A stretch of 64,000 nucleotides of DNA from Hypanus sabinus (taxonomy: Eukaryota): contig NC_082716.1 of NCBI RefSeq assembly GCF_030144855.1, forward strand, positions 53,816,001 through 53,880,000, given 5' to 3'. Below, piece after piece: positions 15,580-56,646 of this stretch. Both the position numbers and the translations under genes were made by a program. Within the stretch, counting starts at the first letter, position 1. Each line of letters opens with the position of its first letter. A model generated the notes under the pieces. The model saw nothing but the letters and a program-made list of their open reading frames with translations, did no database searches and was not told the origin of the DNA.

Positions 15580-18032
15580 GTAAGCCTTGTGAAAACATAG
15601 TGAGGGATGCAATAAAGCATTAATCCATCAGATATCAAAGAAAGAGCATGGACTTTACTAAGCCCTGTTATAGTTCAGTAACTTATTATACTGATTGTGT
15701 GTTAATGTCCTTTTTTAACTCAATTTTCTTCTCTTCTAATGCTGATGTCACATGATTTAAAAAAACACTTCCCTCTGGTACTGGAGCAAGAGCCCAATGT
15801 CTTCCTTCTTTGATATAAACACTTTAAAATACTAAGCGTTATTTGATCCTCACTCAGATCATCAGCAGTGTTCAGAGGATCACAAGCTCAAGGACATTGT
15901 TCCCTCCGGTGAAGGGCTGAGAAAGTAATGCTGCACAACTGAAATGGGAGATTCTTCATGTTAGAGCTGGTCCCTCACTGTGGCCAGCTCGAAAACTCAG
16001 ATTGCTACTCCTAAGATTAACCAAATAAGTATGGTCTAATCTGAAATGAATACTGGGATAGATAAAATTCATTCTGAACAGTTCATTCGTAGCTGAGATT
16101 CACTTTAAAATAGCAAATAAAATTCTGTCAGATTATCTCTGAAGTTACAAATTTTAAAGGTGGTATAAAATATCTTTAATTTATGTAATATATTAATATA
16201 TTCTTGAGTCATCCCAAATGGTTGTAAAACTAATAATTACTCTGTGACATATTAGAGTAATATGTTTGGTCACTGCCCAGGAAAGTATGGTAGAATTATG
16301 GTACTGTTGGAGTTTAAGCTCACAAAAGTGTAGATGTTCAAGTGTCTGAATCTGATACTTGATATCATTGTTACTTTGAATCCGCCAGGCAGTAGTTTTA
16401 ATTTTAGCTATAATTTCTTTTGCATAGCAGTGACTATTCATACACAGTGTGAACCAAACATTGGTTTGCTTTAATGCAAGGAAACATTTCATTAGAATAG
16501 GTTTTAGTTATTGATTCTGTTATTTTTGTATTTCAATGCAATTAATACAATCATGCATATTATCCACTATACTTAATTTCCAGAAAGCAAAGGTAAATAT
16601 CTTCCATGATAATATGGAAAATGCAGGGCCATGAGATCTAATTTTTTGCAATAGATATATGTCCATGGTTTTATCACTTAAAAGCTACACAGGCTTTAAA
16701 AAGAGACATTGCCTAGAAAAAGAGCCATTTGTACATTTTTTCATATATTTTAGATCAAAAGTGTTTTGCATCTGATTTGAACTAAGTCCGCCCATTCCAT
16801 GTTGAGATTGCTTCCTTTCAAAAATTAGCACTTTGTTTCATTTTCCAGACACAGAATAATTTCCCTATTATACTTTGTAAATGTGATAAGACATTCAAAT
16901 TCTAGGGGCTGTTTTAATTATTCCATGACAAAAATTCCATCCTATTATTGCAACGTGTGACCTTTAAAAATAACTCAAATGGAATTCAAGTCACTCCCAT
17001 GTTGCATTCATAGAAAAATGTCCATGTCACAGTTTTCCATTAGACAAAATTGCATATTCTAAGCATGTGCTGGGAAATATAAATTCTGGAAAAGTGAATT
17101 TTATTCCATAGTAAACTGTGAATCCTGAAAAGGTGAATTTCTGCATCTAAAGTGGCTGTAAGGTGAGGCTCGACTGCACATTACAGAAAAGGAAATGCAT
17201 GTGAATTAATTAAATAGCAAAAAAAAACACAGATGTTGAAAATCTGAAATATATACAGAAATTCTGGGAACTCACATTAAATGAAGTAAATGCCTTTGTT
17301 TCCCACTCCACAGTTGCGGCCTGGCCTGCCAAGTATTTCCATCGTTATCTATTTAGATGTGTGAATAAAACTGAGAACTGAGAGCATTGTTTTCCTCTTT
17401 TAAAAATACATCCCTTGTAATTTTTAATAAATCCCTGCTGTAAATTGCAGACCCACCAGTGAATGCCATGGCAGCTGCCTATCTACAGAATGGCTGCCAT
17501 CTGTGAAATACATCCACTGGGAGCAAACCACACAAATAGTTCTTTAAAGCAAGGACGTCCAACTTTCAATATTTTTGTGTGATTTCAGATTTGGCATTAA
17601 AGTTGTAAGAAGTGCCTAATTATCAAATAAAAACTGCCTGAATTTGAATTTCTAGGTAAAAAAAAATAAGGAATTTATTTGAATATCTTGAAGCACAGGT
17701 TTGGTCACATCTGAAGTATTGAGTTACAATGTGTTAAGAATGATGTAAAGTCTGTTAAAAGAGGGTGCAGAAAGATTTCCCAGAATAGTTCTCTTTAAAG
17801 CAAATGAATTTGAGTGGTGACTTCATGTAGTTGATCAGTCAATGTACTGATTAAAATAATCCATTTTCAATCTCTGAAAGGCCAATTACAGATGCCACTG
17901 ATTTAATGTGGCTGGAATAAGAACCAGAGAAACCAGGAATAAAAATTATTTTATTTATACTGCCTACACAACAGTGAAGTAGATGCAATTGAAATTTGCC
18001 AAGTATTTGAAGGAAACAGGATTGCAGTGTAT

Positions 18033-18546
18033 GGGGTATCTAGGGAGGGGTAGCACCTCTGATCGGGGGGGGGTCCTGCCAAGCCCTTTTTCAGGGCAGC
18101 TGGTCTACCTTTGGTCCCCACCTGTGGCTCCAAGTAGTGTAACATGCACAGCGGCCACACCCTGGTAAACCGTCTCAGCAGACGGGCCAAACCAGGTGAG
18201 GGTAGCTGACGGGTCTTCAACCCCCAGTGAGGTAGAGAATCTGTCTATCCCAGTGTGTGAATTCTAGCTTTGGCAGATTGAGCGGAGGAGACCGATTAAT
18301 GGTCCAGCGGTCAAAAAGGCAGGCCAGAAGGTGCTGGTGGAGCCCTAAGAGCACAACGAGGCATTTAGATGTCCTGGTCATCCACTGCAAGAGGCGGTGA
18401 TCTCTTTAACCTCACCTGGCAGCAGGCAAAGGCAAACCACTGCTGTAACCTGCCACGTACAGGATTTCCCAATATGTCAGAGCGGCGTGGAGGGAAATCG
18501 TCCGCCAATTGGAAATTCCAGGTGCGACGCAACGATGATGAAGATT
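18033..18546 (+). mobile_element. Short non-autonomous RTE-like retroelement with HDV-like ribozyme fold at the 5' end
   Basis: GC-richer block with pseudoknot pairings at 18033-18198, a GGDLFNL..AK snippet resembling RTE RT, and a (GAT)n-like tail. Boundaries approximate. Confidence 0.6.
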
Positions 18547-18820
18547 GCAGTAATACTAGGATGGAACCAGGGAATAGGACTAATTGTTACACTTATAAGA
18601 AATTTGTAGATGCTCGAGAGTCCAACTGCCCTCCTGAAGTAAAATGATTCTGAGAAGCTTTAAGGCAATTACAGGTCATAAAAAATAGGAAAGAAAATAA
18701 TCAATATCAAAGATAGACTTCATGACTCCAAGTTTGATTTTAAAAGCATAGAGATTTTAGGAGAACACGAACTCTGATTGAAAAAAAGTTGTTCAACTTT
18801 TCAAAGGTTATCCGTTGGAC

Positions 18821-19034
18821 TGTGGCGACCCACTTTCTGTGCAGGCGAACCGGCTCACAAGTAGCCAGCGCATGGGAGCAGACTTTGGTAATGCACCTCT
18901 GACGTCATTTCCGCCCGGAAAGGGCGGGCGCTAGGAATTAAATGCCAGTGCTGCGAAGTTTGAATAAAGTAGTCTCCAAATGACTTACCGCCTGCGTGTC
19001 ATTATTTCAGCGCTGTGTGTAGCACATCACTACT
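18821..19034 (+). repeat. 5' LTR of the Gypsy element
   Basis: TGTGGCGACC...CACTACT; AATAAA present; direct repeat of 23020-23232. Confidence 0.93.
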
Positions 19035-19035
19035 T

Positions 19036-19048
19036 TGGTGACTCCGAC
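19036..19048 (+). promoter_or_regulatory. Primer-binding site (tRNA-Trp type)
   Basis: TGGTGACTCCGAC, one mismatch to TGGTGACCCCGAC, the complement of the tRNA-Trp 3' end; lies just after the 5' LTR. Confidence 0.8.
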
Positions 19049-19073
19049 AGTCCAAACAGGATTTGGACCAAAG

Positions 19074-22000
19074 ATGACCGACTCTTCATCTGTCCACGCA
19101 GTTTCGCTAAAACTGCCAACTTTCTGGAAGCTGCAACCATGTGTGTGGTTTAACCAGGCAGAAGCCTGTGGTGAACTACATATACCTGTCTGGACACGCC
19201 CCCCCCCCCCCCCCCCCCCGCTGACTGCTCCTGTGGCTCTTCCTACAGACCCCTGTATAAAGGCAATTGGAGGCATTGCTCCTCCCAGTCTCCAGGATGT
19301 CGTATGGTGATCTTTTGCTGCTGACTGCTCTCTTCCAGTGAATAAAAGCCTCACGTCTCCGAGAGTTATTGATGGTGCATCAAAAGCCCAGTTCCAGATT
19401 CAGCAGATATCCTCTGATTCCACGTGTTACTACCACGTGGTGAGCACCCTTGACCAGGAGACGGCCGCCCAGGTTGCGGATTTCATACAGTCGCCCCCAG
19501 AAGAAGGCAAATATGAAGCATTCAAAGCGCTGCTCATTGGGATCTTTGGCCTCTCACGGCGTGAGCGAGGTGCCTGCCTGCTTCACCTGGACGGTTTGGG
19601 AGACAGACGGCCGTCAGCATTGATGAACGAGATGCTGTCCCTGGCTGACAGACACAAGCCCTGCCTCATGTTCGAGCAAGCGTTCCTAGAGCAACTGCTC
19701 AAGGACATACATCTGTTGCTGGCTGACGCAGATTTCAGCGACCCCCGGAAGGTGGCGGCCCGGGCAGATATGCTATGGAAAGCCAAGAGGGAGAGCGTGG
19801 CATCCGTCAGTCAGATTACCAGGCCACGCACCCAACAGCGGACCAGATCAGGCCCGGCAGGGGGGCTCACACCACACAGAGGCAGGAGTGAGGAGGCCAG
19901 TGAACAGTGGTGTTTCTACCACCAGCGGTGGGGCACAAAAGCCCGCCCTTGTCGCCTGCCCTACAAGGGCCAGGGCCAGCTGCCACTAATGACTATGGCG
20001 GCTGGCCACCAGGACAGCCTCTTGTACGTCTGGGACAAACAGTTGCGACACAGCTTCTTGGTCGGCACCGGAGCGGAGATCAGCGTCTTGCCCCTGACGG
20101 GTTACGACACCCGCAACAGGAAGCCAGGACCCACCCTGAGGGCCACAAATGGCAGCATGCACAGTGCAGCTGCGGTTCGGCGTCAGCTGGTTCACGTGGG
20201 ACTTCACACTGGCCGCGGTGGCCCAACCACTCCTGGGGGCGGACTTCTTGCGAGCTCACAGCCTGCTGGTCGACTTGCAAGGGAAAAGACTGGTATATGC
20301 CAAGACTTTCCAGACGTTCTCCCTGGGTGAAGCCAAGTTGCTGGCCCCACACCTGGACTCCATCATGCTGTCGGACAACAAATTCACCAGAATCCTGGCA
20401 GACTTTCCATCGATTCTGGCACCGCAGTTCACGTCAGCCATGCCCAGACACGGGGTACAGCACCACATCCTGATCCAGGGACCACCCCTCCACGCCCACG
20501 CACGAAGGCTCCCCCCGGAAAAGCTCCACCTGGCAAAGGAGGAGTTCAAGAGGATGGAGGAATTTGGGATTGTACGGAGGTCCAACAGCCCATGGGCCTC
20601 CCCCCTGCACATGGTGCCCAAAATAGCCGGGGGTTGGAGACCATGCGGCGACTACTGCAGACTGAATGAGGCTACCACTCCAGACCACTACCCCGTGCTG
20701 CACATACAGGACTTTGCAGCAAACCTGCATGGGGCACGAATCTTTTCCAAAGTAGACCTCGTCCGGGGATACTATCAAATCCCGGTGCACCCTGAAGACA
20801 TCCCCAAAAGAGCACTCATCACCCCGTTCGGCTTATTCAAGTTCCTCCGAATGCCGATCGGCCTGAAGAATGCCGCACAGACGTTCCAGCAGCTAACGGA
20901 CGTGGTGGGACGCGACCTGGACTTTGCGTTCATTTATTTGGACGACATCCTTATAGCCAGCAGTTGTTGTCAGGAGCATCTGTCCCACCTCCGCCAGCTC
21001 TACTCCCGCCTGAGTGATTTCGGCCTCACAATCAACCCAGCCAAATGCCAGTTCGGTCTCGATACCATCGACTTCCTGGGCCGCAGGATTACCAAAGACG
21101 GCGCAACACCTCTGCCTGCCAAGGTAGATACAATCCGCCACTTTGCCCGGCCCAACACGGTCAAAGGCCTACAGGAGTTCGTTGGTATGGTGAACTTCTA
21201 ACACCGTTTCCTCCCCTCAGCAGCCCTTTATAAACCCTGATGTCGGGTAAAGGCAAGGACATTACTTGGGACAAGGAGGCCGCGGCCGCGGCCGCTTTCG
21301 TTAAAGCCAAGGAAGCTTTGGCAGATGCCGCGATGCTGGTGCACCCCAGAACGGACGTTCCGACCGCCCTCACGGTGGACGCATCCGACACAGCGGTCGG
21401 TGGGGTGCTGGAGCAGCTCATTGAGGGGCGCTGGCAACCTCTGACGTTCTTCAGCAAGCACCTACGACCACCCGAACTCAAGTACAGTGCTTTCGACCAG
21501 GAGCTGTTGGCACTTTATCTGTCAATCCGGCATTTCAGGTACTTCTTAGAAGGCAGGCCATTCACTGCGTTCACGGACCACAAACCGTTGACCTTCGCAT
21601 TCATGAAGGTGTCCATTCCCTGGTCATCCCGTCAGCAGCGACATCTGTCCTACATCTCCAAGTACACGACAGACATCCAGCACGTCTCGGGAAAGGACAA
21701 CGTCATGGTGGACGCACTCTCCAGACCAGCTGTCCAGGCCCTGTTCCTGGGGGTGGACTATGCAGCACTGGCGGAGGCGCAGCAGGCAGACGACGAGATG
21801 CCCAGCTACAGGACCACAGTCTCGGGTTTGCAGCTGCAGGACTTTCTTGTAGGCCCAGGTGATAGGACCCTCCTGTGCGACGTGGCTACTGGCCAACCTC
21901 GCCCCATCGTCCCGGCAGCATGGAGGCGGCGAGTTTTCAACTCCCTACATGGTTTGTCGCACCCATCTATCAGGACAACCATCTGGCTGGTCTCCAGCAA

Positions 22001-22975
22001 GTTTGCGTGGCACGGACTTCGCAAGCAGGTCAGTGAATGGGCCAGAACGTGCACGCAGTGCCAAACAGCCAAGGTGCAGCGGCACACTAAAGCCCCGCCG
22101 CAGCAGTTGAAACCCACGCACCAGAGGTTCGACCACATTCATGTGGATATCATGGGCCCCCTACCAGTGTCCTGAGGAGTGCGGTACCTCCTAACTATGG
22201 TTCACGAGGTGGCCAGAGGCGGTCCCGCTCACCGACACATCTACCGATTCCGGCGCCCGAGCACTGATCGCAATCTGGGTAGCACGGTTCGGGGTACCGG
22301 CCCACATTACCTCCGACAGAGGTGCCCAGTTCACCTCCACCCTGTGGTCGGCTGTGGCCAGCCTGTTGGGAACGCAGCTACACCACACAACTGCCTACCA
22401 CCCACAGTCAGACAGACTGGTGGAACATTTCCACCGTCACTTGAAGTCAGCTCTCATGGCCTGCCTGAGAGGGCCTAACTGGGTGGACGAGCTTCCCTGG
22501 GTCCTGCTTGGAATTCATACAGTGCCCAAAGAGGATTTGCACGCCTCGTTGGCCAAGTTGGTGTACGGCGCGCCCCTGGCCGTCCCGGGAGAGTTCATAC
22601 CAGCCCCAAGGGGGCAAGAGGAAGAACCTGCAGCAGTCCTGGACAGGCTATGTGAAAGGCTCGGCAACCTGGCCCCCGTACCAACTTCACAGCACGGATG
22701 GACCCCGACCCATTTACCCAAAGATCTGCAGAACTGTAAGTTTGTGCTTTTACGAAAGGGCGGACAACGGGCACCGCTACAGCGGCCGTACGAGGGGCCA
22801 TTCAAGGTGATCAACAACAACGGGTCCACATACGTTCTGGACATTGGGGGGAAAGAGGAGGTTTTCACAGTGGACCGACTCAAACCAGCCCATGTCGACT
22901 TGGCGCAGACGGTCGAGGTTCAGGCACCGCGGCACAGAGGCAGACCTCCCAAACAGAGGCTGATCCAGACTGTGG
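19074..22975 (+). pseudogene. Disrupted gag-pol polyprotein
   Basis: Gag begins MTDSSSVHAVSLKLPTFW and is split by a solo LTR. Protease reads LVGTGA (catalytic D absent). Frame breaks near 20150, 21200 and 22200; stops at 21199 and 22173. Confidence 0.9.
19167..19382 (+). mobile_element. Solo LTR of an unrelated family inserted in gag
   Basis: TG...CA ends, TATAAAGG and AATAAA; flanked by GAAGCC/AAAGCC. Removing it restores gag WFNQAEA|QFQI. Confidence 0.85.
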
Positions 22976-23019
22976 ACATTGGGGGGTGTATCGCCGGTTC
23001 TGGGGGGGGGGGGGGGTTA

Positions 23020-23232
23020 TGTGGCGACCCACTTTCTGCGCAGGCGAACTGGCTCACAAATAGCCAGCGCACGGGGGCAGACTTTGGTAATGCACCTCTG
23101 ACTTCATTTCCGCCCGGAGAGAGAGGGCGCTAGGGATTAAGTGCCAGCGCCGCGAAGTTTGAATAAACTAGTCTCGAAACGATTTACCAACTGCGTGTCG
23201 TTATTTCAGCGAGTGTGCAGCACATCGCTACA
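23020..23232 (+). repeat. 3' LTR of the Gypsy element
   Basis: TGTGGCGACC...CGCTACA directly after the poly-G PPT. Confidence 0.93.
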
Positions 23233-24049
23233 GGAGCAGAGATTTTGCAATGAATCTGAGTTATAATGCACTGAGGAGGAATGATAGTTAGCCAGCTATC
23301 ATTAGCACTGAATTTAAGACAAGAAATCAACCACCTGTTGCTTATATAATCACAGAAGAGCCAAAATTGTTCTTGGAGAAGATGCTCACATGGGTACATT
23401 AGAAGACTTGATTTTCCTTTTGTGTCTTCCTGTGGTGTTGGTTTGATGTTGATTTCATCCTGGAGTTTCTTTTAAAGAATGCAATCAAATGCATCTGTTG
23501 TTCTCCCTTCCTTTTCCCTGTCAGAAATGCACTCTGATTTGAATTCAGTCAGAACCACTTAAGCATGGATTATTCATTGTTATTACAGTTTTTTTTGCAC
23601 CTCTGTGCTCTTCTGTTTCAAGGTTTTGCTGTGTTAGATGGCAAGCTGCAGTATTCATTTGCATAGAACACAATTACCTTTCTTCTTTATTGGTTATATC
23701 AAATATAAATACTAAATTATGTATTAATTACCTGACTATCTTTAGTTGGAGGTTTGGAAATGTGGGAAGCCCACATATATGAAAATGTTAATCACATATT
23801 GGATGGCAGTAACTTCCACTGGGATACTGTAGCTATTTCTGAACAAAACAAGAAACAAATCACAATATGCTTACGTAGAATGTAGTTTGTAATTTTGGAA
23901 TAGATTTGAAATGTGTAGACCACCATTGATGCAGAGAAAATATATTCAGCCACTTGAAATTTAGTAGCCAATTTAGCTGCTGTAGTATCTTAATTGTTGG
24001 TTTACTTTTTATTTTTGTAAACCTTATGTTGGGATGGAGCATTTGGAGC

Positions 24050-24430
24050 ACAGGGAGAGACTGGATTGGGTTACTTGCTTTTCCCTGGAGCAGAAGAAGC
24101 CGAGATGGATGATAATTGAAGCACACAAATAATGAGGGCCGTGTGCAGGGTGAAAAGTAGCAAAGCATTTTGTTCCCTCCTTCTGAAGAGATGTCCGTTA
24201 TATAGGTTTAAAGCGAGGGGCAGGGGGAATCGGAAGAAGAATTTTTAACATCCTGATGGTATATGAAACCTGATATACACTAGCTGAGGACTGGTGAAGG
24301 GAGATACCTTCATGATGTTTAAGAAGTGTTTAGATGAAGATGAAATGCAATGATGTGGAAGGCTATCAACTGAATGCTGGGAAATGAGATTAGTGTAGAT
24401 AGATGCCTGGTGGCTGGCATGTATGTTCTA
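24050..24430 (+). mobile_element. Old CR1 3' fragment
   Basis: Decayed match to the CR1 ORF2 C-terminus (TTTTCCCTGGAGCAGAAGAAG...). Confidence 0.55.
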
Positions 24431-24449
24431 AATAAGGAGCCCAATTTAA

Positions 24450-25470
24450 CTCCATGGTTTGATGAGCTTAGAAGTACCTTTATCCATCGCCTTTATGTGT
24501 GCATTTTCTGTACTGTAGCTCCTGCACAGTAACAAACTCCCAACCATCCTTCTCACTCCTAGTGACCACATTCTGCATTTTCTGAACCACAATTAGAGAA
24601 GACCTCAGCAACGCTAAAGACCTACACAGACCCAGCAAAGTCGATATGTACTCTTTGCCATGGTGATGAGGGTCACTCCCACGGGTGTAATGCTGCCTCT
24701 GGGGGTGTATTTTGAACTTTTTGGCATCCCTGAAGAGTTTTTGGCCAAGTTTTAAAACATTTTATCTATTCCCTTCTCAAACACCTTCTCATTAGCATTA
24801 AGCAGCTGTGATAGTCGCTGGCTGGTTAGTGCTACCGTTTGGGCAGCAGTTGCCTGCTGATGCCATATTGAGAGCTTTGGTTGAGTCTAGTTGGATTTTT
24901 CTCAACCATTCATGTCCAACAAGTGCTGGTCCTCCACTTTTCAATACATAAAGCTGCAACGGTTGGTTTTGCCCTCCATAAGTCACATACACCTTCATTT
25001 TGCCATTTGGGGATATTTTTCAACTGCGTGGGTCTTTAGCATCACTGAGGTCTTCTCTAATAGTAGCTTGGAAAACAGCCTGTTATCGTCAGCCTCTGAA
25101 ATTATAGTCAAAACTGACCCTGTATCCAGCTCCATTTTCAGTTTTACACCAGACACATCTATTGTGATCCATGTGATTTTGTGATTTGCTTCAGTAATAC
25201 TATACAGTTCTATACTATACAAAGCACACCTTTGTCAGATGCTGTGTTGTCTGATGGTGTTTCTCATTCGGTTACTGTACTTTTGCATAGTTTTCTGTTT
25301 GAAACTTTTCACCTGGTGTAGTTTTTCTCTTTGGTTGTGCTTTTGTTGGCCTTGCACACCCTCCCTATGTGACCTTGTCTGAAACACTTCTTGCAAACAC
25401 TTTCTTTAAAACAACAGTCATTTGCATCATAGGAGGATTTGCCATATCAATAACATTTTTTGGCTTTTGG
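24450..25470 (-). mobile_element. Degenerate Gypsy (Mag/K02A2.6-like) internal remnant
   Basis: Zinc-knuckle remnant near 25350-25460, protease KMELDTGS (24995-25222), integrase WQRVHIDFAG near 24630-24660. RT and RNaseH mostly missing; no LTR seen. Confidence 0.75.
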
Positions 25471-27417
25471 CACTATACAGGGGCACATTGTGCATTTCAC
25501 ATTCTAACCTCCTTTTCTGTAATTCTTCTGAATCCTTTGCTGTATTCTCTAATGATATTGCAATGGTCTGAGTTTTTGCTCGAGTTTCTGCATTGCAACT
25601 TAAACCAAGCATCTGCTGACTCGAGTGAAGAGTGTTCACAACTGAGAGACATCTGATTTAAAATTGTGAGTGTTTTGTTGTATGTTACTCTCAAAGTATT
25701 TTCCTTAGACCAAAAGCACAATAATTCTTCAAAGCACATTTCCTCCAAGCACAAACATAATTTATCAGGGAAGAATGTGTACATTCGGATCTATTTCAAA
25801 TCAGTGTATGCTCACTGCTGACAGTAGAAATCTTAAATTCAAATATTGCAATGTCGGAGAATAAGTTATTTTGAAAATTAATGTGGTAATAGGAGTACCC
25901 TATTGCATTTCACAAACTCAGTGGATCAAATGGCCTTCTTTATGTCGTAAGAACGTGTGATATGTCAGATTGTTCTGTGCCATCCACAGTGTTACTTTAA
26001 GTACAGAAAAATATCATAAAAGTTGTTATTTTATTGCCAGAAAGATGCCTTGTAGTTTTATATAGATAAGATTTTAGAAACGTGTATAGAATTATATTTG
26101 ACAGATAATACGTCTTTATAAATGAGCAATAGGTTTCAATTCATTGATTAGTTTGATGAAAATAATTGGTTGCAATCTAAAGGAGTGACCAGAAATGCAT
26201 CAATTTAACAGTTGATAGCCTCTCATTACACTCTGACTTGAATAAATATGAATACAGAGAGCTGCACTTTAGCAAAATTAATGAAGAATACTGATGAGAA
26301 CTTGTGCATCTGTTGATTATTTGTGGCATTAATTATTATAGAGTTTTACTACTGCAATCTTGGAACTTAAAGGAGTCACTAATTATTTTGACCTTTTATT
26401 GTTTCAGCCTTAAATGCAGTATATAAAATCATTGGTAGAATTTGCCTCAGGCAATCAAAATGAATTGAGTTTAGATTGAGGTAATGCACTCTAATTTCTC
26501 TATTTCTACAATCATACCCTATCATTAGACATCCAGCATCACAGAATAGTTGGAGGGTTTGTCTTTTCGCAAAATTTAATATGAAACACTGAATTTAAAT
26601 CAACATGTTTATAGAGGCCATATCATGACAGAGTTCAGAATTGTACAGTGAGTAATGAGCTTGGAGTCTGCCTCATCTGAACATCCATCCCTTCATTTAA
26701 ATATTTCTGAACATTTTAAAAAATGATGAATACAGAGTTTTCTTAGAAAATTTACTGAAAAGTGTATTATCCTCTTATCATTTCTGGATGGTGCTAAGAA
26801 ACCATTCCTTTCCCCCCAAAAAATATAATTAATGATATGATCATTGTATAACCCTATTTTCAATCAATTCATTCCTTTTATATACTGGGTGCGGAATACA
26901 TCACTTTTTCTTTCATATGTATTCCAAGGCCAAACTGCCTGAGGGGTTTTTGCATCGATTCCAACACCACAGGGCCTTAACTTGTTGCTTTTTCCCCACA
27001 GACCTTTGCTGCAGCTGCACTGAGTTTTCAGTGTCTCCCTTAATATGTAATCTTAGACCTTGAAAGGTTGTAATCCACAACATTTTAGTTGTGCAGAGTT
27101 TCTTGCTGTTTTAGACACATCAGGCAATGTATTTGCCTTCATGATAACCTTCCAGCAGCGGTTGATGTTTGTCTCTCTGTGGTTAGACAGATTAGGAGAA
27201 TGGTCAAAGAAGTGGCAGTGGGATCCAGTGTTGGGAAGTGTACAGTCATGCACTGTGGTAGAAGAAATGAAAAGGTAGACTATTTTCTAAATGGAAAGAA
27301 AATACAAAAATCTGAGGTTCAAAGGGATTTGGGAGTCCTTGTGCAGGATTCCCAAAAGGTTAATGTGGAGAGGAAGACAAATGCAAAGTTAGCATTCATT
27401 TCAAGAGGACTAGAATA

Positions 27418-28397
27418 AATTTTTTAATTTTTAATTTTTGAATTAAAGTTTCTATCTCATTAGGTTTCGGCAATTTATCTCTTAAAAAATTTATTTCTTG
27501 TATGTGTAGTTTGATTCAAAAACAGGTAATTAAACAAGGAATTCATAAGTCAAGACAAAAATGGGAAACTGATTTGAATATTAAAATTGAAGAAACAAGT
27601 TGGTCAAGACTATATCTTGACAGTATGACAAATACAACAAATGTCCGGTTAAGATCAGCGCAATATAATTTTTTACGTCAATTATATATTACACCACAAA
27701 AAATAAATAAATTAAACCCAAATTTATCTGATCAATATTTCTGATGTAATCAAGAAATTGGTATTTTTTTACACTCTACTTGGTCTTGTTTTAAAATTCA
27801 ACCTTTTTGGACAAATTTAAGAATTTTATTGGAACACAACTTCCACATAATCCAACATTATTTTTACTAGGCAGTATTGAAGGGATAAAACCTAAATCCA
27901 AACTGAATAAATATCAGAAAGAATTCATAAAAATTGCATTGACAGTAGCCAAAAAGGCTATTGCAGTTACTTGGAAATCGGATTCATACTTAAGTACAGA
28001 TCGTTGGAAGAAAGAAATTTTTAGCTGCATTCCACTTGAAAAAATTAATTATAATTTAAGAGATAAATATGAAATATTTCTGAAAATTTGGAGCCCTTAT
28101 TTACAAAAGATAGGATTAAATATATAGGTGCTCTGAAGATAAAATTATTGGTTATCTGGGGAAATAAATAAATATATATACTAAAGCTATTATGAACTCC
28201 ATGGAGCATGTGGGGATCTTCCAATATCCAGGCATTCTTTCTTTCCTTTTTCTTCTCTTTTTTTTCTCTTTCTTTAGGGATATGTTAGGGGGGAGGGGTT
28301 AAGGGGAGGGAGGAAGGGTTGATAATTTTTTTTATAATTTTTTTTCCTTCTGTAACCTATTTGAAAATTCAATTTAAAAAATTTTAAAAAAAGAAAA
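27418..28397 (+). mobile_element. 5'-truncated, 5'-inverted L1-clade LINE
   Basis: ORF2 C-terminal remnant with decayed CCHC region, T-rich then G-rich 3' UTR, A-rich tail; 15-bp TSD AAGAGGACTAGAATA (27403-27417, 28398-28412). Confidence 0.88.
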
Positions 28398-39600: not shown

Positions 39601-40890
39601 GCTTTTCGCCCTGCCCAGGCTGTGTTTATAGATGTTCTCAATGGTGGGCAGTTTTCACCACACAGTAGTGTGCTTTGCGGTCCGATACAGGACAATTGCC
39701 ACACCACACTGAGATGCATTTGGTGAGTATGCTCTTAATGGTACAGCGGTCCGTCACTACCCTGGGACAGAGGTGAGCTTTCTTGATGATCCGCAGGAAA
39801 TAAAGGCGCTGTTGTGCCTTTTTGATCAGGGTGGAGGAGTTCAGGGACCAGGTGAGATCCTCAGAAATGTGGGCAGCAAGGAATTTGAAGCTTGATACAC
39901 ACTCCACTACAGCTCCATTAATGTAGATGGGGACGTGCATGTGGTTCCTAGCATGCCTGAAGTCCACAATGATCTCCTTGGTCTTCTGGGTGTTACGGGC
40001 CAGGTTGTTGTCAGCACATCACGCGGCCAGGTGCTGGACCTCGTCCCTGTAGGCCGTCTCATCATCCCCTCTGATCATGCCAATCACCATGGTGTCATCT
40101 GCGAACTTGATTATGGAGTTAGAACCATGTACAGGAATGTAGTCATAAGTGAAAAGGGAGTACAGAAGAGGGCTCAGCACACAGCCTTGAGGCACGCCGG
40201 TGTTCAGGGTGAGAGTGGAGGTGGAGAAGTTGTCTAACTTAACAGATTGGGGTCTGTTAGTCAGAAAGTCCAAGATCCAATTGCAGAGGGATGAGCTGAT
40301 ACCAAGCTGGCGAAGTTTGGCGATAAGCTTGGAGGGGGTCACAGTATTGAATGCCGAACTAAGGTCAATGAACAACATTCTGACATAAGAGTTGGGGCTG
40401 TCCAGATGGGTCAGGGAAGAGTGAAATGCCGTGGAGATGGCATCCTCTGTTGACCTGTTGGTGTAATAGGCAAATTGATGGGGGTCCAGGGTAGTGGGCA
40501 GACGGGATTTCAGATGTGATAGAACCAGTCACTCAAAGCAATTTGCAATAATGGGAGTGAATGCAACTGGGCAGAAGTCATTCAGTCATTCAGTCATTAC
40601 AATGCCACTCTCCCACCTCATTTACCTCCCTCTCCATCCCTTTTGCAGCATCTATACCCCAGAACATTCAACAGCCATTCTTACCTTTGTGATAGCTCAG
40701 TCTCGGTAATAGCCTCAACATCATAGTTTCACATACTGATCCATTCACTAAGCTTATCATTGCCATTCTTGATACGTCTTGCATTAAAATAAGCACATTT
40801 CAACCCATCCAGCTGACTGCAATTATGCCTGTCTGTGCTCACAGTCTTTCTACACGGAGCATCTCCTTTACACCAACTGTTCCATCCTCT
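36690..40890 (-). mobile_element. Decayed CR1 ORF2 interrupted by a Rex/Babar LINE
   Basis: ORF fragments collinear with the 804-3788 protein (LIEFFEDVTKQTDE, VLSEYFASVFT); endonuclease N-terminal part resumes after about 40595. Confidence 0.85.
39262..40595 (-). mobile_element. 5'-truncated Rex/Babar LINE
   Basis: [46 protein letters not shown]; (TCTAA)n tail at about 39260-39278. Confidence 0.88.
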
Positions 40891-54325: not shown

Positions 54326-54392
54326 GTGAAAGACCCAGATATTGTCTGTGGCAGATTATTGAAACTAATTTGTGATATGTAATTTCCTGATA

Positions 54393-56646
54393 GCATTTAC
54401 CGCTTCATCTGGCAGCTCATTCCACACACCCACCACTCTCTGTGTGAAGAAGCCCCCCCCCCATGTTCCCTTTAAACTTTGCCCCTTCACCCTTAACCCA
54501 TGTCCTCTGGTTTTTTTCTCCCCTAGCCTCAGTGGAAAAAGCCTGCTTGCATTCACTCTATCTATACCCATCATAATTTTATATACCTCTATCAAGTCTC
54601 TATCAAATCTTTTAGAGCATTTTTAAACAACGGAACAATATGAGCTGTCCTCCAGTCCTCTGGCACCTCACCCATAGATACCAACAATTTAAATATATCT
54701 GCCAGGGCCCCTGTAATTTCAACACTATCTCCTTCAAGGTCCGAGGGAATACCCTATCAGGTCCTGGAGATTTATCTACAGTACTCTGATTTGCCTCAAG
54801 ACAGCAAGCACCTCCTCCTCGTCAATCTGTATAGGTTCCATGAACTCACTACCTGTTTCCCTTACTTCCATAGAGTCCATGCCAGTTTCCTTAGTAAATA
54901 CAGATGCAAAAAACCCATTTAAGATCTCCCCCATTTCTTTTGGTTCCAGACATAGCCAACCACTCTGATCTTAAAGAGGACCAATTTTATCCCTTACTAT
55001 CCTTTTGCTCTTAATGTACCTGTAGAAGTCCTTAGGATTATCCTTGACTGCCAAAGCAACCTCGTGTCTTCTTTTAGCCCTCCTGATCTCTTTCTTAAGT
55101 ATTTTTTGCACTTTTTATACTCCTCAAGCACCTTATTTGCTCCCTGTCGTGTATGATACATGTCATACATCTCTCTCTTCTTTATCAGACTTCCAATATC
55201 CCCCGAGAACCAAGGTTCCTTATTCTTATTCACTTTGCCTTTAATCCTGACAGGAACATACAAACTCTGCACTCTCAAAATTTCTCCTTTGAAGGCCTCC
55301 CACTTACCAATCACATCCTTGCCAGAGAACAGCCTGTTCCAATCCACGCTTTTTGGATCCTTTCTCATTTCTTCAAATTTGGCCTTTTTCCAGTTTAGAA
55401 CCTCAACCCAAGAACCAGATCTATCTCTATCCATGGTCAATTGGAAACTAATGGTGTTATAATCACTGGAACCAAAATGTTCCCCTATATGCACTTCTGT
55501 CACCTGTCCTAACTCCTAATAGGAGATCCAATATTGCATCCTCTCTAGTTGGCACCTCTATATACTGATTTAGAAAACTTTCCTGAACACATTTTACAAA
55601 CTCTAACCCATCTAGACCTTTAACGGTATGGGAGTCCCAATCAATATGTGGAAAATTAAAATCCCCTACTATCACAACTTTAAGTTTCCTGCAGTTGTCT
55701 GCTATCTCTCTGCAGATTTGCTCCTCCAATTCTCGCTGACCATTGGGTGGCCTATAATACAACAGCATTAATGTGGTCATACCTTTTCTGGTTCTCAACT
55801 CCACCCATATGGCCTCGGTAGACAAGCTCTCTAATCTGTCCTGCTGTAAATGTTAATGCTGTAGCATTTTCCCTGTCTAGCAATGCCAACCCCCTCTCCC
55901 CCCCCACCACACCCTTCATCCCTCTGCCTCTATCACGTCTGAAACATCAGGACCCTGGAACATTAAGCTGCCAGTCCTGCCCCTCCTGTAGCCAAGTTTC
56001 ATTAGTGGCTATAATGTCATAATTGCATGTGTCAATCCATGCCCTCAGCTCGTCAGCCTTCTCCACAATACTCCTCGCATTGAAATAGACATACCTCAGA
56101 AGATTATTACCACCACACACAACCCTTCTTTTTGTGACTTTGCATGAACTTCTAACATCATTTATTTTCACTCCCGCTCCACTATCTGCTCTGGCACTCT
56201 GGTTCCCATCCCCCTGCAAATCTAGTTTAAATTTCCCCCCACCCCCACCACCAGCAGCACTAACAAACCTCCCTGCAAGGATATTGGTCCCCCTGTAATT
56301 CAGGTGTAACCCATCTCTCTTGTACAAGTCCCACCTGCCCCAGAAGAGGTCCCAATAATCCTGAAATCTGAAACCCTGCCCCCTATACCAGTTCCTCAGC
56401 CACGTGTTCATCCTCCAGAGCATCCTATTCTTACCCTCACTGGTATGTGACACAGGTAGCAATCCTGAGATAACTACCCTCGAGGTCCTGCTTTTTATCT
56501 TCCTACCAAGCTCACTCTTCAGGACCTCCTCACTCTTTCTTCCTACGTCATTGGTACTGAAGTGTACCATGGCATCTGGGTGCTCACACTCTCACTCCAG
56601 AATGCCATGCACACGATCAAAGACATTCCTGACCCTGGCACCCAGA
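54393..56646 (-). mobile_element. Second CR1 subfamily copy, internally deleted (esterase, endonuclease, C-terminus; RT core missing)
   Basis: VHFSTND and DGLH esterase, YFNARS and GDFN endonuclease remnants; sequence jumps from the start of RT to IEVYKIM near 54610. Confidence 0.9.

What the first reader, a model, noticed from the sequence alone, without database searches (positions are those of the whole stretch)
18033..18198. HDV-like self-cleaving ribozyme fold, sense to the NEGR1 pre-mRNA
Seen pairings: P1 GGGGTAT (18033-39) with ACACCCT (18157-63), starting with G.U and containing one A.C mismatch; P2 CACCTG (18119-24) with CAGGTG (18193-98); P3 GGC (18126-28) with GCC (18154-56); P1.1 CC (18130-31) with GG (18164-65); P4 CCGTCT with AGACGG; J4/2 GCCAA with putative catalytic C18187. 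L3 is about 25 nt rather than the usual 7-8. Known: RTE and R2 retrotransposons use HDV-like ribozymes to make their 5' ends, and a mammalian CPEB3 intron contains one. Inference: a variant ribozyme in intron 2 that could cleave the pre-mRNA if still active.
Basis: partly seen in the sequence, partly recalled or inferred. Interest (0 to 1): 0.72.

Follow-up and report, generated by a model that had tools for sequence, protein, structure and literature searches.

The report
Fossil HDV-like ribozyme heading a LINE
This stretch is a worn, truncated copy of the start of a jumping gene (a LINE) whose better-preserved relatives fold like the hepatitis-delta self-cutting RNA with an unusual extra hairpin, so it is a relic of a known retrotransposon trick, not a host-gene ribozyme.

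Summary
Alone they are not beyond chance: an equally relaxed descriptor gives about 0.2 hits per shuffled 64-kb window, and no Rfam HDV-family model matches.

A DNA pattern scan and an antisense-ORF search then recovered about 14 homologous copies from public metagenome and Logan assemblies. One of them, L014, places the same 5' block 791 nt upstream of an intact 1092-aa endonuclease plus reverse-transcriptase ORF with no ORF1. Window 18033 to about 18400 is therefore a decayed 5'-UTR fragment of a single-ORF, RTE-like LINE.

In the best-preserved copies (L014, L019) P1 is a perfect 7 bp. The window's A.C mismatch is a private G-to-A change at 18038. P1.1 is invariant and P3 is kept in all but one copy. 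P2 extends to 11 bp with a variable bulge. P4 and a J1/2 hairpin each show one compensatory change. The long L3 holds a conserved hairpin. Repeat homology starts within 2-5 nt of the predicted cut.

Covariation is too thin to exclude a rival nested fold that sequesters the P1 5' strand, and cleavage is untested. The window copy lacks ORF2 and carries several core changes, so it is probably inert. The NEGR1 context was not verifiable. Earlier notes of this scan report the same L3-hairpin architecture on other DNA of this genome.

The parts
18033..18400 (+). Recognisable 5'-UTR fragment of a single-ORF (endonuclease plus reverse transcriptase) LINE family. A GC-rich block continues to about 18650 without detectable homology.
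   Evidence: blastn gives 70% identity to the L014 5' UTR over 18028-18293. Sliding identity is 75-89% in 18033-18210, 58-67% up to about 18390, and background beyond. GC content jumps at about 18030. There is no ORF2 remnant downstream.
18033..18039 (+). P1 5' strand. The predicted cut is 5' of G18033. A18038 is a private G-to-A change.
   Evidence: Relatives L014, L019 and L003 read GGGGTGT here, and P1 is a perfect 7 bp in L014 and L019.
18040..18118 (+). J1/2 peripheral domain (79 nt here, about 87 nt in relatives) with a covarying hairpin, GCCC at 18086-89 with GGGC at 18097-18100. Relative to the other copies, 17 nt are missing just before 18119.
   Evidence: The hairpin's second pair is C-G here and U-A in 12 relatives. 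In relatives the domain closes with CAGG/CCUG directly next to P1.
18119..18124 (+). P2 5' strand (core).
   Evidence: In relatives it is part of an 11-bp P2 with one bulged base.
18126..18128 (+). P3 5' strand.
   Evidence: Kept in 13 of 14 sequences.
18129..18153 (+). L3, 25 nt. It begins U-CC (CC 18130-31 is the P1.1 5' strand), contains an inner hairpin, and ends in G18153.
   Evidence: The inner hairpin is 5-6 bp in relatives and is shortened here by a 1-nt deletion.
18154..18156 (+). P3 3' strand.
18157..18163 (+). P1 3' strand.
   Evidence: The last base is T or C among copies, giving G.U or G-C with G1.
18164..18165 (+). P1.1 3' strand (GG).
   Evidence: Invariant in 14 sequences.
18170..18185 (+). 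P4 hairpin (6 bp, loop CAGC).
   Evidence: Pair 4 is U-A here and C-G in 9 relatives. The 3' half of P4 is deleted in four degenerate copies.
18186..18192 (+). J4/2, GCCAAAC, with candidate catalytic C18187 (C-C-A-A). Relatives read GCUGAAC.
   Evidence: The catalytic role is inferred only.
18193..18202 (+). P2 3' strand (core 18193-98, extension 18200-02).

Best explanation
Window 18033 to about 18400 is a dead, 3'-truncated copy of the 5' UTR of a non-LTR retrotransposon family. The intact members of that family carry one 1092-aa endonuclease plus reverse-transcriptase ORF and no ORF1, which is an RTE-like architecture. The first 170-185 nt of that UTR form, in the better-preserved copies, an HDV-like nested double pseudoknot. 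It has a 7-bp P1 starting at the element's first G, P1.1 (CC/GG), a 3-bp P3, a P4 hairpin, C-N-R-A in J4/2, an 11-bp P2, a structured J1/2 domain, and an unusual 25-26-nt L3 containing its own hairpin.

The most likely function in active elements is co-transcriptional self-cleavage just 5' of that G, which frees the element RNA from upstream read-through transcript, as in R2, RTE and L1Tc. This step is inferred, not shown.

The window copy has a P1 mismatch, a 17-nt deletion at the J1/2-P2 border, altered L3, J1/4 and J4/2 letters, and no ORF2. It is most likely inactive and without effect on the host transcript.

Sub-confidences: LINE 5'-UTR fossil about 0.95; the family head is a true HDV-like ribozyme about 0.65; this copy is inert about 0.8.
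For: - **Homologues.** A pattern scan of metagenome contigs found L002. Its antisense ORF then found P0001-P0006 and their cluster members. Their contigs are L003-L023.
- **LINE context.** L014 carries the homologous block 791 nt upstream of a 1092-aa ORF with Exo_endo_phos and RVT_1 domains. No sense ORF longer than 62 aa precedes it.
- **P1.** It is perfect in L014 and L019. The window mismatch is a private G-to-A change. The closing base varies T/C, which fits G.U or G-C.
- **Other helices.** P1.1 is invariant and P3 is kept in 13 of 14 sequences. P2 is 97.6% paired with a bulge that reads A, C or is absent. P4 pair 4 and J1/2 hairpin pair 2 each show a two-sided change.
- **Conservation gradient.** The head is the best-conserved part between the ray copy and the others, at 75-89% against about 60% downstream.
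- **Boundary.** Upstream flanks of independent loci are unrelated. Homology starts 2-5 nt before G1.
- **Chance at family level.** A descriptor with a perfect P1 hits L014 and L019 once each on the sense strand only. It is expected 0.23 times per 128 kb scanned, or about 0.0015 for an 800-nt UTR.
- **Literature.** An extended P2 and a structured J1/2 are described for the RTE-borne Agam-2 ribozymes (PMC4908430). Long J1/2 loops and a dispensable P4 are described for R2 (PMC3774820).
Against: - No cleavage data exist.
- No Rfam HDV-family model matches the window or the relatives, even at E<=10 on short stretches.
- An L3 of 25-26 nt is far outside the usual 7-8 nt, and J4/2 is 7 nt.
- Covariation is thin. 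There are 3 pairs with two-sided changes, and one of them rests on a doubtful alignment of the L011/L012 head. P1 has no sound compensatory change.
- A rival nested fold pairs the P1 5' strand with a 10-nt complement at the 3' end of J1/2. It is 6-8 kcal/mol more stable in the nearest-neighbour model and is transcribed before the P1 3' strand.
- The three head-bearing loci share TGTAT (or GAT) just upstream of the predicted cut. A cleaved template should not carry those bases.
- Only about 5 independent insertion loci were available. The descriptor used for the chance estimate was shaped after seeing the candidate.
Confidence: 0.62

Rival explanations
1. The block is a LINE 5'-UTR fossil, but the conserved structure is not a ribozyme. 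It would be a long 5' hairpin (the head paired with the 3' end of J1/2) plus a P2-closed domain holding two hairpins. Such a structure could serve promoter, RNP-binding or translation functions. The HDV-like crossing pairs P1 and P1.1 would be coincidental.
For: The minimum-free-energy folds of L014, L019 and L003 all give the 10-bp head helix and the P2-closed domain. The nested model pairs 87% of cells, and its covariation measures are about as good as those of the HDV model. It is 6-8 kcal/mol more stable than the estimated HDV-like fold. No Rfam HDV model matches. The L3 length is atypical. A short conserved TGTAT lies upstream of the predicted cut.
Against: This model leaves the invariant ACACCC(C/T)-GG block and the U-CC start of L3 without partners. 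Yet this is the most conserved part of the UTR. The 7-nt perfect complement sits at the first nucleotides of the repeat, and the C-N-R-A motif sits in the right place. These would have to be coincidences, estimated at about 0.0015 per UTR with a post-hoc descriptor. The window copy has lost the 3' strand of the rival helix by deletion but keeps the P1 3' strand.
Confidence: 0.25
2. A chance match: a much-relaxed HDV descriptor fitted by eye to GC-rich repeat DNA, with no structural meaning at all.
For: The expected number is 0.2 loci per shuffled window. The z-score of the fold is -1.25. No Rfam match. An alternative P1 strand exists at 18068.
Against: Homologous copies from other assemblies keep or improve every helix. 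The window's only P1 mismatch is absent from them. The fold sits at the 5' boundary of a LINE UTR. The head is more conserved than the rest of the UTR.
Confidence: 0.08
3. An active or host-exapted ribozyme that cleaves the host pre-mRNA in this intron, comparable to the CPEB3 ribozyme.
For: The core letters are retained in this copy: a G.U first pair, P1.1, P3, a 6-bp P4 and C-C-A-A in J4/2.
Against: It is one decayed member of a dispersed repeat family. It has a P1 mismatch next to the active site, a 17-nt deletion removing the J1/2 closing strand, a shortened L3 hairpin, and a J1/4 changed from GCAA to TAAA. There is no evidence of locus-specific conservation. Gene context could not be verified.
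Confidence: 0.03

Closest known systems
drz-Agam-2 HDV-like ribozymes of Anopheles RTE retrotransposons
   Same: They sit in the 5' UTR of a single-ORF endonuclease/reverse-transcriptase LINE. P2 is extended (12 bp there, 11 bp plus a bulge here). A stable base-paired J1/2 peripheral domain abuts P1 and P2 (PMC4908430).
   Different: L3 here is 25-26 nt with its own hairpin, J4/2 is 7 nt, and the host is a vertebrate. Activity is untested. The RTE clade placement of the ORF was not tested phylogenetically.
R2 retrotransposon HDV-like ribozymes
   Same: A double-pseudoknot ribozyme that defines or processes the 5' end of a non-LTR element. J1/2 loops of hundreds of nt are tolerated and P4 is dispensable (PMC3774820).
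   Different: R2 is site-specific for the 28S rRNA gene, and its cut is often upstream in 28S sequence. That paper calls the R2 L3 'otherwise conserved'. Here the flanks are unrelated and L3 is expanded.
CPEB3 intronic ribozyme of mammals
   Different: From my own knowledge, CPEB3 is a compact, single-copy, locus-conserved host element. This is a mutated copy of a dispersed LINE head, with no sign of locus-specific conservation.
L1Tc Pr77 / L1TcRz of Trypanosoma cruzi
   Same: The first nucleotides of a LINE encode an HDV-like ribozyme that acts co-transcriptionally (PMC3185411 and PMC3383444, abstracts).
   Different: L1TcRz is 77 nt and doubles as an internal promoter. A promoter function was not examined here.
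Genomic HDV ribozyme
   Same: The same helix order. As I recall the HDV sequence (from memory, not tested), it shares U-CC at the start of L3, GG then GCAAC after P1 (in the relatives), and a C followed by purine-A in J4/2.
   Different: HDV has a short J1/2 and an L3 of about 7-8 nt. No Rfam HDV model detects this family.

Membership tests
HDV-like self-cleaving ribozymes | Nested double-pseudoknot order: P1 5', P2 5', P3 5', L3, P3 3', P1 3', P1.1, P4, J4/2, P2 3'. | tested here: met
   The order is present in the window and in 14 aligned sequences, with 90% of cells paired.
HDV-like self-cleaving ribozymes | A 6-7-bp P1 beginning with the cleavage-site G paired to U or C. | tested here: met
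   7 of 7 pairs in L014 and L019. 6 of 7 in the window (A.C at 18038/18158) and in L003. Heads are degenerate or missing in the other copies.
HDV-like self-cleaving ribozymes | P1.1: two C-G pairs between the start of L3 and the two bases after P1. | tested here: met
   C-G at both positions in 14 of 14 sequences. Because it never varies, this is conservation only.
HDV-like self-cleaving ribozymes | A 3-bp P3 closing a short L3 of about 7-8 nt. | tested here: not met
   P3 is met. L3 is 25 nt in the window and 26 nt in relatives, with a 5-6-bp inner hairpin.
HDV-like self-cleaving ribozymes | A catalytic cytosine in J4/2 within a C-N-R-A context. | tested here: inconclusive
   The motif is present: C-C-A-A in the window and C-U-G-A in relatives. 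Two extra bases precede P2. Catalysis is not testable here.
HDV-like self-cleaving ribozymes | A match to a curated covariance model (Rfam HDV, CPEB3, drz families). | tested here: not met
   No such match at the gathering score or at E<=10, in the window or in the relatives. The large J1/2 and L3 insertions may explain the miss.
HDV-like self-cleaving ribozymes | Covariation supporting the pseudoknot helices P1 and P2. | tested here: inconclusive
   P2 never varies in its paired bases. P1 has only a G.U/G-C change and one doubtful two-sided change. The sound two-sided changes lie in P4 and in a J1/2 hairpin. A nested rival scores about the same.
HDV-like self-cleaving ribozymes | Mg2+-dependent site-specific self-scission giving 5'-OH and 2',3'-cyclic phosphate ends. 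| not testable with these tools
   Requires an in-vitro transcription and cleavage assay.
Retrotransposon-borne HDV-like ribozymes (R2, RTE, L1Tc type) | [quoted passage not shown] | tested here: inconclusive
   Flanks of independent loci are unrelated, and homology begins 2-5 nt upstream of G1 with a shared TGTAT or GAT. Only three head-bearing loci were available, and no target-site duplication was found.
RTE-clade LINE | A single ORF with an N-terminal AP-type endonuclease and a reverse transcriptase, with no substantial ORF1. | tested here: met
   L014 has a 1092-aa ORF with Exo_endo_phos and RVT_1, and a 791-nt UTR with no sense ORF longer than 62 aa.
RTE-clade LINE | Phylogenetic placement of the reverse transcriptase within the RTE clade. 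| not tested
   No reference set was at hand. The only measures are 22.7% identity to the window's CR1 ORF2 and nearest Atlas clusters that are unnamed endonuclease/RT proteins, mostly of Chordata.

The most novel reading that the evidence does not exclude
Marine chordates, including rays, carry a class of HDV-like ribozymes at the heads of RTE-like LINEs. In this class the catalytic loop L3 carries an inserted hairpin. A built-in 10-bp alternative helix can sequester the P1 5' strand, making a possible on/off switch. The class is invisible to Rfam models and to standard descriptors, so the true number of HDV-like ribozymes in vertebrate genomes would be much underestimated.
Probability: 0.4. 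Interest if true: 0.6.

Novelty: new variant of a known kind. Interest (0 to 1): 0.45.

Why it matters
HDV-like ribozymes at LINE 5' ends are known from insects, trypanosomes and R2 elements. A vertebrate LINE family whose ribozyme tolerates a hairpin inside L3, a loop that forms part of the catalytic core, would widen the structural definition of the family. It would also explain why covariance models and descriptor searches miss such elements.

For this particular locus the result is deflating. It is a dead fragment of a repeat, not a regulatory ribozyme of the host gene. The practical gain is a set of public homologues (L003, L014, L018, L019 and others) that make an in-vitro test straightforward.

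Tried and rejected
- **Protein word searches** with the window's own ORFs (18369-18644 on the + strand, 18035-18244 on the - strand) found nothing. The second was probably defeated by the length filter, because the related ORFs are 84-154 aa.
- **Pfam** on five frames of the block found nothing.
- **An endonuclease N-terminus** that I read by eye in 18682-18774 was rejected. There is no Pfam signal, and tblastn with the L014 ORF2 finds nothing in 18000-19000 or 23234-27500.
- **Target-site duplication** searches around 18033 and in L003 and L019 gave only 9-mers at chance level.
- **Self-BLAST and a covariance model** of the core (R1) found no second copy in the window.
- **No RTE-like reverse transcriptase in the window.** Only CR1 and L2-like fragments are present.
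- **Chance hits.** L001 (a soil contig), L015-L017 (bacterial MAGs) and L024 (a phage contig) are chance matches to my patterns. One further viral scan was empty.
- **A longer shared leader upstream of G1**, which I thought I saw by eye, did not survive a Smith-Waterman shuffle test.
- **The alternative P1 strand at 18068** is not conserved.
- **L022 and L023** gave no head and only 47 nt of 3' UTR, so the 3' junction and the target-site question stay open.
- **Not used:** the large representative protein search, structure prediction and complex prediction.
- **Housekeeping:** the window has no N runs, and I took none of the fetched contigs to be human.

Full report
**1. The observation**

The region was read directly and every pairing was checked by script.
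- P1 is GGGGTAT (18033-39) with ACACCCT (18157-63). It has a G.U first pair and one A.C mismatch at 18038/18158.
- P2 is 18119-24 with 18193-98. P3 is 18126-28 with 18154-56. P1.1 is 18130-31 with 18164-65. P4 is 18170-75 with 18180-85.
- J1/2 is 79 nt and L3 is 25 nt. J4/2 is GCCAAAC, which is 7 nt, not 5.
- P2 can be lengthened across a C.A mismatch, and L3 can form a small inner hairpin.

The window has no N runs.

**2. Is it more than chance on its own? No.**

- It finds only this locus in the window on either strand. It allows two alternative P1 5' strands, at 18033 and at 18068.
- The same descriptor finds 0.2 loci per window in 40 dinucleotide shuffles, and 0.2 in 40 shuffles that keep local composition.
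- Rfam gives no match at the gathering score on the whole window. It gives no HDV-family match at E<=10 on 17500-18800.
- The minimum-free-energy fold of 18033-18202 is a nested competitor at -73.7 kcal/mol with z = -1.25.

**3. Surroundings**

- GC content jumps from about 0.32 to 0.55 at about 18030.
- Directly 3' of the block lies an unrelated LTR retrotransposon. Its LTRs are 18821-19033 and 23020-23233, about 90% identical. It carries a gag-like DUF7041, RVT_1, RNase H and an integrase zinc finger, in frames broken by shifts.
- The block 18033-18820 has no second copy in the window by BLAST or by a covariance model of the core.
- Its reading frames hit nothing in Pfam.

**4. Finding relatives**

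- Earlier notes of this scan say that other places in this genome, a stingray, carry HDV-like folds 'with an extra hairpin in L3' or 'expanded J1/2 and L3' at the 5' ends of RTE-type elements. I treated these as leads only. A look-up by sequence gave nothing.
- Word searches with the window's own ORFs failed.
- A pattern made of the P2-P3-L3 start and the P3-P1-P1.1 block was scanned against metagenome contigs. It gave one chance match (L001) and one true homologue, L002.
- The 139-aa antisense ORF of L002 found six related predicted proteins, and their clusters added more. Their contigs are L003-L023.
- These contigs come from ENA marine and other metagenome assemblies, including Tara Oceans, and from Logan assemblies of sequencing runs. 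I took none of them to be human.

**5. What the element is**

- In L014 the homologous block lies at the 5' end of a 791-nt UTR. It is followed by an intact 1092-aa ORF with Exo_endo_phos and RVT_1 domains. No sense ORF longer than 62 aa precedes that ORF.
- This is the single-ORF architecture typical of RTE-type LINEs. Clade placement was not tested. The ORF is 22.7% identical to the window's CR1 ORF2. The nearest Atlas clusters are endonuclease/RT proteins, mostly of Chordata.
- L012 and L013 also continue into the start of ORF2. The L002 and L003 groups share only the first ~530 nt of the UTR, and in both it is followed by the same downstream sequence, which carries an integrase-like ORF on the opposite strand.
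- The window copy is 70% identical to L014 over 18028-18293. Identity is highest in the fold itself at 75-89%. It is about 60% up to about 18390 and at background beyond.
- No ORF2 remnant exists between 18000 and 27500. The window therefore holds only a 5' fragment.

**6. The fold in the family (alignments A3 and A4)**

- **P1.** The 5' strand is GGGGTGT in L014, L019 and L003. The 3' strand is ACACCCC in L014 and L019 (and in seven copies whose heads are missing or degenerate), so P1 is a perfect 7 bp in those two.
  - The window's mismatch is a private G-to-A change at 18038. L003 has a different private change in the 3' strand.
  - The base paired with G1 is T or C, giving G.U or G-C. This fits P1. 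It does not fit the CCUGG/CCAGG helix of the window's nested fold.
- **P1.1 and P3.** P1.1 is invariant, and P3 is kept in 13 of 14 sequences.
- **P2.** It is 11 bp in the relatives, with a single bulged base that is A, C or absent.
- **P4.** All six pairs are kept in most copies, with U-A in the window against C-G in nine others at pair 4. Four degenerate copies have lost its 3' half.
- **J1/2.** A hairpin within it has C-G in the window against U-A in twelve others.
- **L3.** It begins U-CC, ends in G, and contains a 5-6-bp hairpin in all copies.
- **J4/2.** It reads GCUGAAC in the relatives and GCCAAAC in the window. Both contain C-N-R-A.
- **J1/4.** After P1.1 the relatives read GCAAC. As far as I recall this matches genomic HDV, but that rests on memory only.
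- **Descriptor.** With a perfect P1 required, the descriptor hits L014 and L019 once each, on the sense strand only. It is expected 0.23 times per window, or about 0.0015 for an 800-nt UTR. The descriptor was shaped after the fact.
- **Literature.** An extended P2 and a base-paired J1/2 domain abutting P1 are described for the RTE-borne Agam-2 ribozymes (PMC4908430). Very long J1/2 loops and a dispensable P4 are described for R2 (PMC3774820).

**7. The 5' boundary**

- Three independent loci keep the head: the window, L014, and the L003/L019 locus. L018 is 5'-truncated at +17. The L002 group has a degenerate head, and the L011-13 group lacks it.
- Upstream flanks of independent loci are not significantly similar in a Smith-Waterman test with shuffles.
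- Directly before G1, the window and L014 share TGTAT. L003 and L019 carry a tandem duplication of a 9-nt unit that contains the head.
- The repeat therefore begins within 2-5 nt of the predicted cut. That is close to expectation for a 5'-end ribozyme but not exact. A cleaved template should not carry those bases. No target-site duplication or 3' junction could be obtained.

**8. What speaks against a ribozyme**

- No Rfam HDV model matches any relative.
- Covariation is thin. It cannot separate the HDV-like model (90% of cells paired, three pairs with two-sided changes, one of them doubtful) from a nested model (87%).
- In the nested model the head pairs with a 10-nt complement at the 3' end of J1/2.
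  - That nested fold is the minimum-free-energy structure of L014, L019 and L003.
  - It is 6-8 kcal/mol more stable than my rough sum for the pseudoknotted fold.
  - Its 3' strand is transcribed before the P1 3' strand. It could be a trap, a switch, or the real structure.
- L3 is three times the usual length.

**9. The window copy**

Compared with L014 and L019, the window copy carries:
- the P1 mismatch;
- a 17-nt deletion between two CACCTG repeats, which removes the 3' strand of the J1/2 closing helix and the outer part of P2;
- two C-to-A changes and a 1-nt deletion in L3;
- TAAA for GCAA in J1/4, and CA for UG in J4/2.

P4, P3, P1.1 and the G.U first pair are intact. I judge the copy probably inactive, but this is inference. 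That the intron belongs to NEGR1, and on which strand, could not be checked.

**10. Verdict**

- The locus is an ordinary dead LINE fragment. The family it belongs to is a credible, untested variant of the HDV-like ribozyme with a hairpin in L3.
- The scan has already noted the same architecture on other DNA of this genome (s1-181407, s1-207047, s1-216705, s1-213472). My evidence rests on different sequences, which I found independently.

Noticed in passing
window 18821-23233: An LTR retrotransposon directly 3' of the finding. Its LTRs are about 213 bp and about 90% identical, it has a G-run polypurine tract before the 3' LTR, and it carries a gag-like DUF7041, RVT_1, RNase H and an integrase zinc finger in frames broken by shifts. 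A possible 4-nt target duplication (GGAC/GGAG) flanks it.
   Followed up: partly
L014:3990-4095, L019, L003 (- strand): The first 11 nt of the LINE head (GGGGTGTCAGG) have a conserved 10-bp complement (CCTG-R-CAC-Y-C) at the 3' end of J1/2. It competes with P1 and is the minimum-free-energy pairing. It could be a folding trap or a switch for the putative ribozyme. The window copy has lost it through a 17-nt deletion.
   Followed up: partly
window 18028-18032; L014 and L003 upstream of the head: TGTAT (or GAT) directly precedes the predicted cleavage-site G in three independent loci. L003 and L019 carry a tandem duplication of the 9-nt unit ATGGGGTGT. The cause is unexplained: a short transcribed leader, a target preference, or a 5'-junction artefact.
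   Followed up: partly
L002, L003, L005-L010, L019-L021: Several contigs from different samples share the first ~530 nt of the LINE UTR. In L002 and L003 this is followed by the same downstream sequence, which carries an integrase-like ORF on the opposite strand. This looks like a composite repeat unit or a duplicated locus, and some members have a heavily mutated head.
   Followed up: no
L018, L022 (Tara Oceans and 'marine metagenome' assemblies): Chordate LINE sequences, including ORF2 fragments 94-96% identical to L014, sit in ocean metagenome assemblies. They are presumably animal DNA in the samples. This is useful as a source of relatives, but the organism is unknown.
   Followed up: no
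window 804-4717 (- strand) and 54368-56591 (- strand): A CR1-type LINE with an intact 994-aa ORF2 and a 201-aa ORF1, and a second, broken CR1. Many further CR1 3' fragments are scattered through the window.
   Followed up: no
window 40022-40528 (- strand): A 169-aa open stretch of reverse transcriptase from a different LINE, which looked L2-like by eye. It is distinct from both CR1 and the family studied here.
   Followed up: no
window 17952-17979: A small hairpin upstream of the element gives a weak Rfam CRISPR-DR4 match (E = 0.11, far below the gathering score). It is almost certainly chance.
   Followed up: no
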